A DNA stretch of 63,324 nucleotides, filler included, from Octopus bimaculoides (taxonomy: Eukaryota), in assembly GCF_001194135.2 (NCBI RefSeq). It is 6 parts of 5 records of this genome, joined end to end, with 100 filler letters (N's around TTAATTAATTAA, not from the genome) between each part and the next. Parts side by side here need not be neighbours in the genome. Positions count along the whole stretch, not along the records: positions 9,739 to 36,317 come from NC_068987.1; 5 more parts are not named here. One strand, written 5' to 3'. Below are positions 10,851 through 19,274 of this stretch, one piece after another (positions within the stretch are counted from its first letter, which is position 1; each line of letters opens with the position of its first letter). The notes under the pieces are model-generated. The model made no database searches, was not told where the DNA came from, and was given only the letters and a program-made list of their open reading frames with translations. The position numbers and the translations under genes were made by a program.

Positions 10851-13319
10851 GAATTCCAACACCCTAGCTCATTTAACAGCGTGATCATCTATAAACAAGG
10901 AAATAAAATAAAATTTTCCAACGTAAAGACTTATCTCCCTTAACATATGTGATAAGAGTTATTTCCCTTGACATATAAATGAGAATTACGTCCCTTGAAG
11001 TCCCTTTTAGAATTGCAAGATATTTCCTTTAACGTCATAAAAATGGTAATATTTACGTCCATACCTATATAGACACTCGCAGGTTCGTTTTTAAGAGGTG
11101 GAGGCCTGTGGATTATAGCGTTGGAGAGAGAAGTCACCAAAATGAACATCTAGAAAATAAATGAATTACTGACTGAACTCTGTACAGTTATTTGATCATT
11201 TAGAAATAATCTAGTCTATAAAAATACTGGATGGTCACGGTTGGAATCACTCTAATTAGATGAGTGATCTGGGGCTAAACACCATTTGCTCATACACGTG
11301 TTTTTTTTTTGTTTTCGTTTTTTTTATTATTATTGTTATTTACTCTTTACTTCTTCTTTTGCTATTACAATGAACTGTACAGCGCTGAGCAACCACAACT
11401 GAAAAATCCTCTCAACCCAGCCCCAGTAGATGCACTCTTATAGCCTTCTCCCTAGTGTCATATATAGAGGTCCCACTACATCATTTTCTACAGGGATCTA
11501 TTATACTATTAAGATAAGCCTTTTCGTCCCATTACCATTGCAATTTCTTTTAGTAAACACTGTTAATATCAGACGATATGTATAACATAAGATATATACA
11601 GTGGTTGTTAAGACTCAGGTCAGCTCTGAAAGGTATTCCAGCCATGATCATTTCATTTTATTTTTAAGCATATTTTAGTTAATAACTGAGTCTGGATGAA
11701 GGGGCCATAACCTTTGCAATCGTCCAAGACCAGTGTATCTAAAGTCTCCATTCCTTTTTTTAAGATACTAGAATAGGGTTTGGCTGCTGTACCACCCAGG
11801 TGCAGTGACTGCATAGAAACTCCCTCTTTTGTTGGAAGAAGCCTACATCTACAAGATCGTAAACTATGACAGTTTAGCCATCAGACTGAGAGAATCTTGA
11901 CATGGCCTGACCACTTCAAAGTCTAAGGACTTAAGGGCTGAAACGCTTGCATAAGAGAGGCTTCTTTTATGAAAATCTTCTGTTCAGCTCGCCATAGTGT
12001 TTATTACTACACGTTAAGTGTTTCCAGAAAGAATAAACTGAAGTCTTAGTTTACTCATTTTTTGAGGTGTTTTAAACTAAAGGAACAAACTCATCAGTTA
12101 TACAATAACTCAACCATTTCCAGCTGAGCATTATGCCTCCTAAAGTCAGTGAACTGTAACTTTAACAAACAACAACTGGCACTCTATCGGTTGGGTTCCA
12201 GTTGAACTGTTCAACAGAACTTCTTGCTCATGAAATTAATGTGCAAGTGGTTGAGCAATCCACAGACATGTGTTCCCTTAACGTAGTTCTAAGGGAGATT
12301 CAGCATAACACAGAATGTGACAAGTTGGAAATTACTAATTTTGCTTAGTTATTACTGAAGGACTTTGAAATACAGGTACTACTCATTTTTTCCAGCTGAG
12401 TGGAATGGAGCAACATGAAATAAAGTGTCTTGCTCAAGGACATAACACACCACTGGAAATCGAACTCACAACCATACAATCATGAGCCAAGTATCCAAAA
12501 CTCTAAGCCACACACTTTCACTGTAACTTTAAACAGTACATAAACACCATATTAACTGGACAAATTGCAATTTCACAAACTTTACAAAAATTTGAAGATT
12601 TAACCAATTGAAACAATGAGAAGTAAATAAGACAATACTGACATATATAAATTTATTGAGATCTTAAAACAAGAACAAAGAAAAATTCAAATCCACCAAT
12701 TGGTTTCGTCACAAAATTGTGCACTTAATTAATTTCATTATAAAATTTTACAGACACAATATAGAAATCATTTAAAAGGTAATATTCGTTTCATATTCTG
12801 GCACAAGATCAACAAATTTGGGGGAGGAGATAAGTCGATTATATTGATCTCAGTGCTTTGAGTTTTGTGTGGTGACAGTATCACATATTTGTGATACAGT
12901 CACAGACTTTTACAATATTGCTAGTTAAGTGATACAGCTGACTTCATTCTTGTGATGGAGACCTTTTTTAAGAATCACACACTATTCTATGCAAAAGCTA
13001 CTTTCATATTTCAAATTTCGTTTTTTTACTTTATAATATTTGGCATTAGGAAGGGCATCCAGCTGTAGAAACCTTGTCAGATCAGATTGGGGGCCTGGCA
13101 CAGCCTTCTGGCTTGCAGTCCTCAGTCAAACTGTCCAACCCATTCCAGCATAGAAAGCAGGCGTTAAACAATGATGACGACGACAATGATGATGATGATG
13201 ATAAAACTGCTAACATTACACTAACTCTGCTTACAGTAGCATTTTATTTTCAGACAACATTTGATGTATTGATATCCAGAATGAACTGTAATGAATATCA
13301 ATAAGCTAAATACTAAAAT

Positions 13320-13577
13320 GGAGGCGCGTGGCGTAGTGGTTAGGGTGTCAGCACCATGATCGTAATATTGTGGTTTCGATTCCTGGTCCGGGCGACGCGT
13401 TGTGTTCTTGAGCAAAACACTTCATTTCACATTGCTCCAGTCCACTCAGCTGGCAAAAATGAGTAATCCTGCAACAGACCGGCGTCCCATCCAGCTGGGG
13501 TGCACGTACGCCATTGGAACTGGGAAACCGGGCCCATGAGCCTGGCTAGGCTTTAAAAGGGCGCATTTATTATTTTT
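13320..13577 (+). mobile_element. tRNA-derived SINE (family C) with 13-bp TSD
   Basis: A-box TGGCGTAGTGG and B-box-like GTTTCGATTCC; flanked by taaatactaaaat at 13307-13319 and 13578-13590; empty site at 17216-17228. Confidence 0.9.
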
Positions 13578-17120: not shown

Positions 17121-19274
17121 CTACTTTGCTTACAGTAGCATTTTATTTTCAGACAACATTTCAGATGAAATGATGTAATGATATCCAGAATGAACTGTAA
17201 TGAATATCAATAAGCTAAATACTAAAATAAATTCTTACTCATATTTATTAATATAATTATTATATTTTATCATATTCTCAACATCTTTCTCTGAGTTTCC
17301 ACTGCACCACCAGATGCACTTGTGTCTTACTGAAGTGCATACAACATTGTTTTTTGAGGTTTTAGAATTTTGACTTATCGGCATCATCATTATCTAATGT
17401 CCAATTTCTATGCTGGCATGTATGGAACGGTTTGAGAGGGAACCAGAGACTTGCAGGGCTGTGGGAAGCTCCTGTGTCACCTTTTGTATAATTTCAACTT
17501 ACAGGGTTTATTAAGTTCCTTCACATGTTACTTTACCTATTCATCTGTTTGTTGTGTAGAATATGTGCTTTGGGTGTTGTGTGGTGACTGTATCACATAT
17601 GTGTGTTGTGTGAGTTCTGTTATGTGTTTTAATGTCACGTGTTGATTGTGCAGAATATGTGACTGTGTAGTTCATGTTATATTATTGGAAGGCACATGCA
17701 TAGAATATGAGATAATGAGATGTAGGCAATGGTGTGTGAGGTGGGCTATAATACTGATATTATAATAATCAGTATTGTATATCCAAAGTTTGTTTCTTTG
17801 GTTTTTTTGCAATATGTTATGAGCAAAATATATTTTAATTCACCTACAAGCTGCATGGCAATAAATTTAGGTCCATATGTGAAGAAATAATGATTTTAAA
17901 GTTCTACATTGCAAATATTAACAAGGCATTGCAAGGCACATATGTCAACCATTTTAAACAAACAATAGGAAGTCAATGTTTTTATTTTTTTATATAAAAG
18001 ACCAATGCCCCACAGCAGAATAAATATTTCACAACACCAATTCACTTTTCCTCAAAAGTTGAGATCTTGTGATATTTGTTATCGCAGATTTCTAAGCCTT
18101 GACGTACTATCGTGGCTACACGCTAGTTGATTTCATCTTTAGTTCACTATCTATTTCTTTCATGACGCGTAAGGCAAGCTCATCCTTATATATAGGAGCA
18201 ACAACTTGAACATTGACTGGAAGTCCAACACTGCCTGGAATTGACTGCAAAGAAACAAGACATATATATTTGGAATTGCCAAAGGATGTTATGGAAGAAT
18301 CGTTGTCTGCAAAGTTTAAGATGACTCAGACTACAAAGTCATGAATTTAAACTTCACTACATTCTTTGTCGTGATATGTTGTTCTTCTTACTTCCTTATA
18401 GAAAGTAAATAATCATTATTTAATGTGATTGTGCTAATACATTAGGCAAATTAAGATTATATTATTTCCCCATCTTTAGAACATACATCGATTTCAAATT
18501 TTGGCACAAGGCCAGCAACTTTGTGGGAGAGGAAAGTTGATTACATCAACCCCAGTGCCCAACTGGAGCTTATTTCATTAATCCGGAAAGGATGAAAAGC
18601 AAAGTCAACCTCAATGAAATTTGAACTCAGGACATACAGACAGACAAAATGCCACTAAGTATTTTTCCCAACATGCTAACAATTCTACCAGCTCACCACT
18701 TTCTTTAGAACATATATTGGCAATATTAATAACTGTGCTGTATTTTGATCTGTTCATCATTGAGTGAACAGACAAACCAAAATGCCATGTAAAATATAAA
18801 TATGGTAAATATCTACAAAAAATAGCTTTGTTGCTTAACATATGACTAATATGATATCAGATATTGTTGTGTGATTAAAAAATTGGTTTCCCATCCCTGT
18901 AGTATCCGGTTTGAACCTGATAATATGAACTTGCATAATATGGCAACTTAGCAAGTGTCTTCTGCCATAGCCTTGTGTTTTCTGATGTCTTTTAAATGAA
19001 ACTCAATATACAAAACTTTGTGAAAGACTGCCTACCCCCACCTACCTATTTGTCATTCTCCTCTCATACTCTTATGAAATTATGCCTCCTTTCCTTCTCC
19101 CATAATCCATTGTCCACGAATCTCCACTATAGTAAGACACCTACGCTTCTCCCTCTATCGTTCGTTAGTCTTCAACACCGGACAGAAAGCCATTTCTCCC
19201 TTCTCTCAAATACACTCCCACTCGGTCAAGGGGGTTTTTCTCTCCATTTTCTTTCTTTACTTTGTCTAGCAAGT
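17121..19274. repeat. Local duplication copy B
   Basis: Direct-repeat partner of 13221-15688; starts ctactttgcttacagtagc and ends ttactttgtctagcaagt. Confidence 0.92.
18116..18244 (-). CDS. FAAH: FAAH-like terminal exon, proximal copy (B)
   Basis: cttgtttctttgcag|TCA...GTG TAG; SIPGSVGLPVNVQVVAPIYKDELALRVMKEIDSELKMKSTSV*; GLPVxVQ...DELxLR amidase C-terminal motif. Confidence 0.88.
   Translation of the reverse strand, partial: SIPGSVGLPVNVQVVAPIYKDELALRVMKEIDSELKMKSTSV

What the first reader, a model, noticed from the sequence alone, without database searches (positions are those of the whole stretch)
13221..19274. FAAH-like gene has two intact, diverged terminal exons: candidate alternative last exons
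Seen: only the last exon, its 3' flank and part of the last intron are duplicated; exon 14 at 19671 lies outside the repeat. Both copies keep the same acceptor (cttgtttctttgcag), phase 0 and an open frame. The first 38 codons differ at 16 of 114 nt and 9 amino acids (I/V, A/V, A/I, F/Y, E/K, V/A, I/V, L/I, K/M) with no premature stop, and a 1-nt indel changes the tail (KKKSN* versus KMKSTSV*). Inference: one locus could make two amidase isoforms with swappable C-terminal modules and separate 3'UTRs. Alternatively, copy A is a relic of a deleted tandem paralog.
Basis: partly seen in the sequence, partly recalled or inferred. Interest (0 to 1): 0.8.

Follow-up and report, generated by a model that had tools for sequence, protein, structure and literature searches.

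The report
Octopus FAAH gene's duplicated last exon
An octopus fatty-acid amide hydrolase gene carries two intact copies of its last coding exon, kept in three octopus species for about 34 million years and annotated as alternative endings in two of them, but the far copy evolves almost freely, so it is probably a minor variant and not a new functional module.

Summary
On the minus strand, about 2.2 kb (the last ~1 kb of the final intron, the final coding exon and ~1 kb of 3' flank) occurs twice, 3.65 kb apart. Both copies keep the same acceptor, phase 0 and an open frame. I confirmed 16/114 nt differences, 9 amino-acid differences and the 1-nt indel.

The window is Octopus bimaculoides and holds the 3' part of a FAAH1 ortholog. 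It is not an assembly artefact. [quoted passage not shown]

- O. sinensis isoforms X1/X3 end in the proximal exon (B).
- O. sinensis isoform X2 and the O. vulgaris model end in the distal exon (A).

B behaves like the rest of the gene (dN/dS 0.37 versus 0.24) and keeps an AATAAA 130 nt after its stop. A evolves at about the neutral rate (dN/dS ~2; 13 replacement versus 2 silent changes, P=0.014 against the other exons). Its replacements are nevertheless conservative (P=0.008) and its acceptor is untouched.

Best reading: a conserved pair of mutually exclusive last exons, with B the main one and A a weakly constrained minor one. I could not check RNA reads. This is a known kind of arrangement and of modest interest.

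The parts
19671..19804 (-). It encodes (R)FPSYPLLYNLLNYPVVSMPITKVSEEDVNEKYNARTLPEFCLKG, its donor is GGC|gtaggt, and the next exon starts in phase 0. It lies outside the repeat.
   Evidence: 100% amino-acid identity to the O. sinensis ortholog.
19275..19670 (-). Single-copy 5' part of the last intron, upstream of the duplicated segment.
17123..19274 (-). Repeat copy B (proximal): 1030 nt of intron, the last exon and about 1 kb of 3' flank.
   Evidence: Orthologous to L001 51495-54020.
18116..18244 (-). Last exon B, coding part with stop (42 codons + TAG). It is used by the O. bimaculoides model A0A0L8I126 and by O. sinensis isoforms X1/X3. Its frame-shifted tail ...STSV* is shared with O. sinensis.
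   Evidence: dN/dS against O. sinensis is 0.37, like the rest of the gene at 0.24.
17981..17986 (-). AATAAA 130 nt after the stop of B. It is conserved at +128 in O. sinensis and absent from the matching place in copy A of both species.
15689..17122 (-). Single-copy spacer between the two repeat copies. It is conserved in O. sinensis and O. vulgaris (blastn 89.4-89.5% over 1352 nt; 92.7% in a global pairwise alignment). It holds no FAAH-like reading frame.
13224..15688 (-). Repeat copy A (distal): intron-like part, last-exon copy and 3' flank, interrupted by a species-specific insertion.
   Evidence: Orthologous to L001 56168-58363.
14453..14575 (-). Last-exon copy A, coding part with stop (40 codons + TAG). 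It keeps the family's ancestral end ...KKKSN*. Its orthologs are the last exon of O. sinensis isoform X2 and of the O. vulgaris model.
   Evidence: Against O. sinensis: 15 nt and 11 aa differences, dN/dS ~2. Replacements are conservative, P=0.008.
14635..15424 (-). Intron-like stretch of copy A that is 92-100% identical to 18302-19086 in copy B. The two O. bimaculoides copies are closer to each other here than to their O. sinensis orthologs, which indicates a gene-conversion tract after the species split. It ends about 45-60 nt before the acceptor.
18302..19086 (-). The partner of that conversion tract in copy B. It includes a SINE-like element at 18526-18704, matched by 14874-15052 in copy A.
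   Evidence: (D3, D7, D17).
13606..13611 (-). AATAAA 842 nt after the stop of A (homologous to 17249 in B, and at +870 in O. sinensis A). It is a candidate poly(A) signal for the distal exon. A further AATAAA at 13243-13248 sits about 25 nt before the end of the repeat unit.
13319..13577 (.). A 259-nt SINE-like insertion found only in O. bimaculoides copy A, flanked by a 12-nt target-site duplication ttttagtattta. It is absent from copy B and from O. sinensis.
   Evidence: A related copy lies at 26334-26468 (D18). No tRNA or Rfam match.

Best explanation
What the locus is. The window holds the 3' part of the O. bimaculoides ortholog of the O. sinensis gene 'fatty acid amide hydrolase 1'. This is an amidase-signature enzyme, and its last exon supplies the final strand and helix of the Amidase domain.

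The duplication. Before O. bimaculoides split from the O. vulgaris/O. sinensis lineage, a ~2.2-kb piece was copied 3.65 kb downstream in the same orientation. The piece comprised the end of the last intron, the last exon and its 3' flank. The gene now has two mutually exclusive last exons, each with the same acceptor, phase, open frame, its own stop and its own downstream AATAAA signals.

Roles of the two copies.
- The proximal exon B is the regular ending. It is constrained like the rest of the gene and has a conserved poly(A) signal 130 nt after its stop.
- The distal exon A is a second ending. It is reached when the acceptor and poly(A) site of B are passed over, and it would give a 3'UTR of about 0.85-1.2 kb.
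- A is weakly constrained. The number of replacements is at the neutral rate, but they are filtered against radical changes. This is what one expects of a minor isoform, not of a specialised module.

Later history. After the species split, gene conversion homogenised about 800 nt of intron in front of both exons in O. bimaculoides and stopped short of the exons.

Shown: the duplication, its age, its intactness, its annotation as two isoforms in sister species, and the rate contrast between A and B.

Inferred: that A is actually spliced in O. bimaculoides, that B is the major form, and that the choice works by competition between the splice site and the poly(A) site.
For: Identity of the locus. 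O. bimaculoides model P0163 contains the window's exons exactly and ends in B. O. sinensis P0165 matches rat and human FAAH1 structures at E=3e-90 with the SLKE, GGSSGG and GGSIR motifs aligned. Pfam Amidase spans positions 1-444 of 445 in both the B-ending protein (P0163) and the A-ending protein (P0273).

Duplication and conservation. Searches show it in the window. The syntenic two-copy layout is in O. sinensis L001 (penultimate exon 48841-48972, B 52601-52729, A 57252-57374) and in O. vulgaris L004 (42703-42834, 45080-45205, 49731-49853). In the exon and near 3' flank the orthologs are closer than the paralogs (0.92/0.88 versus 0.81-0.85). The split is dated at ~34 My in PMC10700109.

Isoforms. 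X1/X3 (592 and 586 aa) end in B. X2 (590 aa) and O. vulgaris CAI9725350 end in A. The recorded gene ranges end exactly on A's stop codon.

Splice and poly(A) signals. The 25 nt before the exon are identical in all four copies. AATAAA lies at +130/+128 in B of both species and is lost in A of both. A keeps AATAAA at +842/+870.

Selection.
- Other exons: dN/dS 0.24 (P=3.6e-5 against 1).
- B: 0.37.
- A: ~2.0, with 13 replacement and 2 silent changes against 18 and 19 in the other exons (P=0.014).
- Replacements between the A orthologs have a mean BLOSUM62 of +1.0, against -0.32 for random mutation (P=0.008). A versus B within the window gives P~0.004-0.007.
- Both A peptides score within the range of working paralogs on a family profile.

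Gene conversion.
Against: - No RNA evidence could be inspected. Isoform X2 and the O. vulgaris model are pipeline predictions. The O. vulgaris pipeline also used protein alignments and ab initio predictors.
- The only O. bimaculoides model found ends in B.
- A's nucleotide divergence between species (12.5%) equals that of its non-coding flanks (11-12%), and dN is about equal to dS. O. sinensis A has lost the aromatic residue (Y/F/W) that nearly all homologs keep.
- Under pure neutrality an intact 40-codon frame after this much divergence is not rare. My rough estimate is ~0.3, from 0.7-0.8 indel events per 100 nt and a stop probability of 0.04-0.19 per lineage.
- The family-profile tests on A are only marginal (P=0.10 and 0.08).
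- The exon carrying the catalytic serines is not in the window. It falls where an assembly gap lies, so the intactness of the O. bimaculoides gene is unverified.
Confidence: 0.55

Rival explanations
1. Copy A is a functionless leftover of a local duplication that happens still to be open. The models that end in it are prediction artefacts or reflect rare splicing noise, and the gene effectively has one last exon (B).
For: - A's replacement rate equals the neutral rate (dN 0.155 against dS 0.14 in the gene's other exons and 7-12% divergence in non-coding DNA).
- A differs significantly from the other exons in its ratio of replacement to silent changes (P=0.014).
- O. sinensis A has lost the conserved aromatic residue.
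- A has lost the proximal AATAAA in both species.
- B lies first on the transcript with an identical acceptor, so it should win by default.
- An intact frame is not improbable by chance (about 0.3).
- The O. vulgaris annotation mixed in protein alignments and ab initio predictions.
Against: - Replacements in A are far more conservative than random mutation would give (P=0.008 between orthologs).
- Length, frame, stop position and all 25 nt of the acceptor region are unchanged in both lineages over ~34 My.
- Two separate annotation pipelines produced models ending in A.
- By my own knowledge of NCBI's pipeline, extra isoforms normally need transcript support. I did not verify this here.
Confidence: 0.3
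2. Copy A is a specialised alternative C-terminal module under diversifying selection. The two isoforms would then differ in stability, oligomerisation, localisation or regulation through their separate 3'UTRs, and selection keeps the exons from being homogenised.
For: - dN/dS is about 2 in A, with conservative replacements.
- The gene-conversion tract in O. bimaculoides covers ~800 nt of intron but stops 45-60 nt before the exons.
- The pair has been retained for ~34 My.
- The two copies have different poly(A) signal layouts and tails.
Against: - dN/dS of 2 is not significantly above 1 (P=0.5) with only 40 codons.
- The A/B differences are mostly I/V, A/V and L/I swaps on what look like buried positions of a strand and a helix. 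That speaks for fold maintenance, not a new function.
- There is no expression or biochemical evidence.
- The end of one conversion tract may be chance.
Confidence: 0.1
3. The second copy is an assembly artefact: two haplotypes, or a collapsed and mis-filled repeat, placed in tandem.
For: The window comes from a gapped short-read assembly (N runs at 22177, 30534 and 33423). About 600 nt of the two copies are 98.5-100% identical.
Against: - The same layout with the same spacer is present in two independent assemblies of other species, one of them without gaps in the locus.
- The copies differ by 11-15% in the exon and 3' flank, by several indels and by a 259-nt insertion.
- No N run lies between or beside them.
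Confidence: 0.01
4. Copy A is the last remnant of a once complete tandem paralog whose other exons were deleted, or it belongs to a neighbouring FAAH-like gene.
For: - The gene sits in a cluster of FAAH1-like paralogs on one chromosome.
- A keeps the ancestral tail ...KKKSN* that the paralogs have.
- A is slightly closer than B to paralog P0160's last exon (85.1% against 82.5%).
Against: - No other FAAH-like exon lies between B and A or within about 3.5 kb (O. bimaculoides) to 10 kb (O. sinensis) downstream of A.
- A and B share 2.2 kb of intron and flank at 80-100%. Homology to paralogs is ~360 nt with P0160 and 75-77% with the P0164/P0275 gene.
- A's likeness to the paralogs is retained ancestral state, because it is B that carries the derived frameshift.
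- The paralogs examined each have a single last exon.
Confidence: 0.04

Closest known systems
Tandemly duplicated, mutually exclusive terminal exons (Drosophila pip with eight homologous clusters of terminal exons; the PGRP-LC 3' variable regions), as reviewed in PMC9013439
   Same: Homologous last exons arranged in tandem. Each has its own acceptor, stop and 3' end, and one is chosen per transcript. They arose by local duplication of the end of the gene.
   Different: There are only two copies here. No competing RNA structure was found: one AT-rich 18-nt pairing has no covariation. The distal copy shows almost no constraint on the number of replacements. Usage is known only from automatic annotation.
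Mammalian FAAH1 (rat and human; structures 1MT5, 4DO3 and others)
   Same: The ortholog aligns over residues 59-583 at E=3e-90 with the catalytic motifs in place. The last exon corresponds to rat ...NSVGLPVAVQCVALPWQEELCLRFMREVEQ, the end of the amidase fold.
   Different: About 37-40% identity. The gene belongs to an octopod-specific tandem cluster of several FAAH1-like genes. As far as I know, mammalian FAAH1 has no duplicated last exon; this is from my own knowledge and was not tested.
Tandem duplicated exon substitution events in human genes (PMC9741552, PMC8373072)
   Same: Isoforms that are identical apart from one homologous exon-sized segment, derived from exon duplication and conserved between species.
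   Different: Those are mostly ancient internal exons under strong purifying selection in both copies, with both isoforms highly expressed. Here the pair is terminal, much younger than most of those events (it arose after this gene split from its octopod paralogs), and one copy is nearly unconstrained.

Membership tests
Amidase signature family / FAAH1 | Full-length match to the Pfam Amidase domain (PF01425) | tested here: met
   P0163 (the model containing the window's exons, B ending) scores 313.8 bits over profile positions 1-444 of 445. P0273 (O. sinensis, A ending) scores 306.2 bits over 1-444 of 445.
Amidase signature family / FAAH1 | Close sequence relationship to experimentally solved FAAH1 | tested here: met
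   O. sinensis ortholog P0165 against 4DO3, 1MT5 and other FAAH1 chains: E=3e-90 over residues 59-583.
Amidase signature family / FAAH1 | Ser-Ser-Lys catalytic residues (motifs SLKE, GGSSGG, GGSIR) | tested here: inconclusive
   The motifs are present and aligned in the O. sinensis ortholog. In the window the exon for residues ~216-284 was not found. It should lie between 35656 and 32680, where a 911-nt N run sits.
Amidase signature family / FAAH1 | Hydrolysis of fatty-acid amides | not testable with these tools
   An enzyme assay is needed.
Alternative last exons from tandem duplication | Two homologous terminal exons in tandem, same strand, each with an acceptor in the same phase, an open frame and a stop | tested here: met
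   All four copies in the two species share the identical 25-nt acceptor region.
Alternative last exons from tandem duplication | Each exon has its own poly(A) signal | tested here: met
   B has AATAAA at +130, conserved in O. sinensis. A has AATAAA at +842 and +1205, and at +870 and +964 in O. sinensis. A lacks the proximal signal. These are consensus matches only; cleavage sites are not known.
Alternative last exons from tandem duplication | Transcripts join the same upstream exon to either terminal exon | tested here: inconclusive
   This is met at the level of public gene models in O. sinensis (X1/X3 against X2) and O. vulgaris. No reads were seen, and no such model was found for O. bimaculoides.
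Alternative last exons from tandem duplication | Conservation of the pair across species | tested here: met
   O. bimaculoides, O. sinensis and O. vulgaris. Paralogs and one Argonauta gene have a single last exon.
Alternative last exons from tandem duplication | Purifying selection on both copies | tested here: inconclusive
   B has dN/dS 0.37, like the other exons. A has dN/dS ~2, different from the other exons (P=0.014), yet its replacements are conservative (P=0.008).
False duplication in an assembly | Near-identical copies next to gaps, absent from independent assemblies | tested here: not met
   11-15% divergence in the exon and flank, no adjoining N run, and presence in two other assemblies.
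Decayed pseudo-exon | Stop, frameshift or lost splice site in at least one lineage | tested here: not met
   The frame, length, stop and acceptor are intact in O. bimaculoides, O. sinensis and O. vulgaris.

The most novel reading that the evidence does not exclude
The octopus FAAH1-like cluster may diversify its enzymes by exchanging homologous exon blocks. The conserved pair of last exons seen here would be one case, with the distal exon evolving under diversifying selection. The O. sinensis neighbour gene would be another: it spans 256 kb and its four 584-aa isoforms differ only by block-wise homologous substitutions of residues 1-113, 122-209 and 224-333. If these are real transcripts, this would be a variable-exon locus for a lipid-signalling hydrolase.
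Probability: 0.12. Interest if true: 0.55.

Novelty: new member of a known kind. Interest (0 to 1): 0.33.

Why it matters
If exon A is really used, the octopus makes two FAAH1 proteins that differ in the last strand and helix of the catalytic domain and in their 3'UTRs. FAAH1 is the enzyme that ends signalling by anandamide-type lipids. The locus would then be a clean, datable example of how a partial tandem duplication turns into alternative last exons. In this example one copy stays constrained, the other drifts, and gene conversion acts on the intron but not the exons.

It also matters for annotation. The current O. bimaculoides model is chimeric and lacks the second ending. The finding does not open a new kind of mechanism, and the isoform pair is already present in RefSeq for a sister species.

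Tried and rejected
- Word-index protein searches with short queries were nearly blind. The penultimate exon plus B tail found only a 112-aa paralog fragment. The O. sinensis C-terminal 133 aa with the A tail found nothing. I therefore found no transcript-derived (Logan) protein joining the penultimate exon to A.
- The locus of P0001 is not on record.
I used an alignment of window pieces instead.
- Aligning the exon-13 fragment to P0001 misaligned it, so I dropped it.
- The P0002 gene locus gave no DNA because it is too long.
- The spacer has no homology downstream of copy A, so a simple 3.65-kb tandem unit is not supported.
- I looked for RNA pairing that could steer exon choice. One AT-rich 18-nt complement (19429-19446 against 18261-18278) exists. 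The single change in O. sinensis breaks a pair and is not compensated, so I rejected it.
- There is no tRNA and no credible Rfam family in 13200-19900. The mir-297 hit is at 31 bits against a threshold of 90, in low-complexity sequence.
- An ORF at 10258-10554 that looked by eye like a mariner transposase has no Pfam match.
- The literature search for FAAH in octopus found nothing relevant.
- The A-versus-B dN/dS within the window (0.52, P=0.19) is uninformative on its own.

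
Full report
**1. The observation**

The gene lies on the minus strand. A repeat scan and a BLASTN of the region against itself show one long direct repeat. The core is 1923 aligned columns at 88.8% identity (15454-13578 versus 19116-17216). Weaker extensions reach 15688/19274 on the 5' side, and after a 259-nt insertion in copy A the 3' side reaches 13224/17123.

The start-to-start distance is about 3.65 kb, and a 1.43-kb single-copy spacer (17122-15689) separates the copies. 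The upstream coding exon (19804-19671) is outside the repeat.

Both copies contain a last exon preceded by the identical cttgtttctttgcag and starting in phase 0:
- B (18244-18116) reads SIPGSVGLPVNVQVVAPIYKDELALRVMKEIDSELKMKSTSV*.
- A (14575-14453) reads SIPGSVGLPVNIQVAAPAFEDELVLRIMKELDSELKKKSN*.

I recounted 16 differences in the first 114 nt (12 transitions, 4 transversions), 9 replacements, and a 1-nt length difference that shifts the tail.

**2. What locus this is**

A profile built from window pieces plus one paralog fragment retrieved a full-length octopus protein. A search seeded with that protein listed the octopod FAAH1-like family.

- P0163 (O. bimaculoides, UniProt A0A0L8I126) contains the window's exons exactly from residue ~288 to its end, and it ends in tail B. 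The window is therefore O. bimaculoides.
- The O. sinensis ortholog is 'fatty acid amide hydrolase 1' (P0165, XP_029639293). It aligns to rat and human FAAH1 crystal-structure chains at E=3e-90, with the SLKE, GGSSGG and GGSIR motifs in place.
- Pfam Amidase covers the proteins to profile position 444 of 445 whichever last exon they carry. The last exon is thus an integral end of the catalytic domain, not an appendage.

The window's exon map on the minus strand is: 35727-35656, 32680-~32636, 30110-29985, 29162-29037, 27185-27096, 23816-23730, 23081-23037, 21818-21777, 21062-20955, 19804-19671, then B and A. The exon for residues ~216-284, which carries the catalytic serines, was not found. It should lie where a 911-nt run of N sits.

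**3. The duplication is real and old**

The O. sinensis locus (L001) and the O. vulgaris locus (L004) show the same order in synteny: penultimate exon, B, spacer, A. The spacer is conserved at about 89.5% by blastn over 1352 nt (92.7% in a global pairwise alignment).

| Species (locus) | Penultimate exon | B | A |
|---|---|---|---|
| O. sinensis (L001) | 48841-48972 | 52601-52729 | 57252-57374 |
| O. vulgaris (L004) | 42703-42834 | 45080-45205 | 49731-49853 |

In the exon and near 3' flank the orthologs are closer to each other (B/B 0.92, A/A 0.88) than the paralogs are (0.81-0.85). B's frame-shifted tail ...STSV* is shared by O. bimaculoides and O. sinensis. The duplication and the 1-nt deletion in B therefore predate the split of these lineages, which PMC10700109 puts at about 34 My.

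This removes the assembly-artefact reading. Within O. bimaculoides the copies also differ by 11-15% in the exon and flank, by several indels and by an insertion with a target-site duplication, and no N run adjoins them.

**4. Copy A is not part of another gene**

No other FAAH-like exon lies between B and A or downstream of A.

- Paralog P0160 (L002) has one last exon behind a 480-nt intron. It shares only ~360 nt with A (85.1%) and B (82.5%).
- The convergent pair P0161 and P0275 (L005) and an Argonauta gene (L003) also have single last exons.
- A and B are each other's closest relatives over 2.2 kb.
- A's ...KKKSN* end is the ancestral state shared with the paralogs. B carries the derived frameshift.

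The spacer has no counterpart downstream of A. The event was therefore a partial local duplication whose exact mechanism I cannot reconstruct.

**5.

The 90% cluster of P0165 holds four proteins:
- O. sinensis isoform X1 (592 aa), ending in B.
- O. sinensis isoform X3 (586 aa, four accessions), ending in B.
- O. sinensis isoform X2 (XP_029639294, 590 aa), which joins ...EFCLKG to SLPNSVGLPINIQIAAPTAKDELALRLMKELDNELKKKTN*, the ortholog of A.
- O. vulgaris CAI9725350, which also ends in A.

The recorded gene ranges end exactly on A's stop codon in both species.

These are pipeline models and I could not inspect reads. The O. vulgaris pipeline combined Iso-Seq and RNA-seq transcripts with protein alignments and ab initio predictions. 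The number of accessions suggests that B is the commoner ending.

**6. Signals**

The 25 nt before the exon are identical in all four copies. B has AATAAA 130 nt after its stop, conserved at +128 in O. sinensis. Both A copies have lost that signal but keep AATAAA at +842/+870, and another one near the end of the repeat unit.

The acceptors are identical and B is transcribed first. The simplest mechanism is therefore kinetic competition. Splicing to B followed by cleavage at its strong proximal site gives the default mRNA. Skipping B's acceptor and reading through gives the A mRNA with a longer 3'UTR. This is inference.

**7. Selection**

The comparisons below are between O. bimaculoides and O. 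sinensis.

| Sequence | Codons | dN | dS | dN/dS | Comment |
|---|---|---|---|---|---|
| Other exons | 231 | 0.034 | 0.14 | 0.24 | P=3.6e-5 against neutrality |
| Exon B | 42 | 0.054 | 0.147 | 0.37 | Indistinguishable from the other exons |
| Exon A | 40 | 0.155 | 0.077 | ~2 | 15 nt and 11 aa differences |

A's 13 replacement and 2 silent changes differ from the 18 and 19 of the other exons (P=0.014), but not from neutrality. A's nucleotide divergence equals that of its flanks. So A is not constrained in how many residues change.

The changes that did occur are much more conservative than random mutation with the same transition/transversion mix would give:
- Between the A orthologs, mean BLOSUM62 is +1.0 against -0.32 (P=0.008).
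- Between A and B in the window, P is 0.004-0.007.
- On a profile of 250 non-octopod homologs, both A peptides score within the range of working paralogs. Each lies above its neutral simulation, though only marginally (P=0.10 and 0.08).

An intact frame alone is weak evidence. I estimate a chance of roughly 0.3 under neutrality. Taken together, A looks like a translated but weakly constrained exon, which is the usual signature of a minor alternative form. A functionless relic remains a serious rival.

**8. Mosaic identity**

Within O. bimaculoides the copies are:
- 75-79% identical at the 5' edge of the unit;
- 92-100% identical over 15424-14635, including a shared SINE-like element;
- 80-90% identical in the exon and 3' flank;
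- 93% identical near 13768-13569.

In the high-identity intron stretch the two O. bimaculoides copies are closer to each other (0.94-0.99) than to their orthologs (0.85-0.97). This indicates gene conversion after the species split. The tract ends 45-60 nt before the acceptor. Whether selection kept the exons apart cannot be told from one tract.

**9. Comparison with known cases, and verdict**

Tandemly duplicated, mutually exclusive terminal exons are a described class, for example Drosophila pip and PGRP-LC (PMC9013439). Homologous exon substitution is well studied in human genes.

This locus is a new member of that class in a cephalopod lipid hydrolase. The isoform pair is already present in RefSeq for O. 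sinensis, although I found no paper on it.

My estimates are:
- Real, conserved duplication: ~0.97.
- A is spliced as an alternative last exon at some level in Octopus: ~0.65.
- A is a distinct functional module: ~0.1-0.2.

Interest is modest.

Noticed in passing
Proteins P0152, P0153, P0002 and P0159 (O. sinensis 'fatty-acid amide hydrolase 1-like' isoforms X1-X4); gene range 256 kb: All four isoforms are 584 aa and differ only by block-wise homologous substitutions (residues 1-113, 122-209, 224-333). It looks as if 5' exon blocks of one tandem paralog unit are spliced onto the 3' exons of the next. This is either read-through chimeras across tandem FAAH paralogs or merged gene models.
   Followed up: partly
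P0163 (O. bimaculoides A0A0L8I126) against window 35656-35727: The 2015 gene model that contains the window's 3' exons has an N-terminal half (residues 1-~287) identical to paralog P0160. The window's own exon at 35727-35656 instead encodes ...NVPQAMLT, as in the O. sinensis ortholog. The model is probably a chimera of two neighbouring paralogs.
   Followed up: partly
window 33423-34333 (N run): The exon for residues ~216-284, which carries GGSSGG and GGSIR (the catalytic serines), is missing from the window. By position it should lie in this gap, so the gene cannot be called intact from this assembly.
   Followed up: partly
window 13319-13577: A 259-nt SINE-like insertion with a 12-nt target-site duplication (ttttagtattta) lies just after the AATAAA at 13611 in copy A. 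It is absent from copy B and from O. sinensis, so it inserted in the O. bimaculoides lineage. A related copy lies at 26334-26468. It has no tRNA or Rfam match.
   Followed up: partly
window 14874-15052, 18526-18704, 27931-28109, 28246-28424, ~15700-15880, and inverted copies at 24604-24793 and 34632-34856: A family of ~180-nt SINE-like elements is scattered through the introns. One of them abuts the 5' boundary of copy A (15689), and the sequence just outside copy B's boundary (19275-19300) resembles its 3' end. This hints at repeat-mediated recombination as the origin of the duplication.
   Followed up: no
P0169 (O. vulgaris, 477 aa): This model ends ...NFGINSRQCWTPSQCPGCCSYI, which is a last exon read in the wrong frame because the 134-nt penultimate exon is skipped. 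It is either an annotation error or an out-of-frame skipping transcript of a paralog (compare the frame-0 ORF at 18338-18189).
   Followed up: no
window 19429-19446 and 18261-18278: An 18-nt AT-rich complementarity (16 of 18) links the single-copy part of the last intron to the region just upstream of B's polypyrimidine tract. The one difference in O. sinensis breaks a pair and is not compensated, so it is probably chance.
   Followed up: yes
L005 (O. bimaculoides CM046607.1 15.28-15.32 Mb) 31377-31499 and 36432-36551: Two other FAAH1-like paralogs (P0161, and the P0164/P0275 gene) lie tail to tail, with their last exons about 5 kb apart on opposite strands. A ~320-nt piece of their inter-genic DNA is 87-90% identical to the distal 3' flank of both A and B (13614-13927 / 17252-17593). 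It may be a repeat or a conserved 3' element.
   Followed up: no
window 10258-10554 (minus strand): A 99-codon open frame (…FVPRSLTENQKQSGLNACRELKEQLGVDLDPFLKVITGDGCW…) looked to me like the N-terminal part of a mariner-type transposase, but it has no Pfam match.
   Followed up: yes
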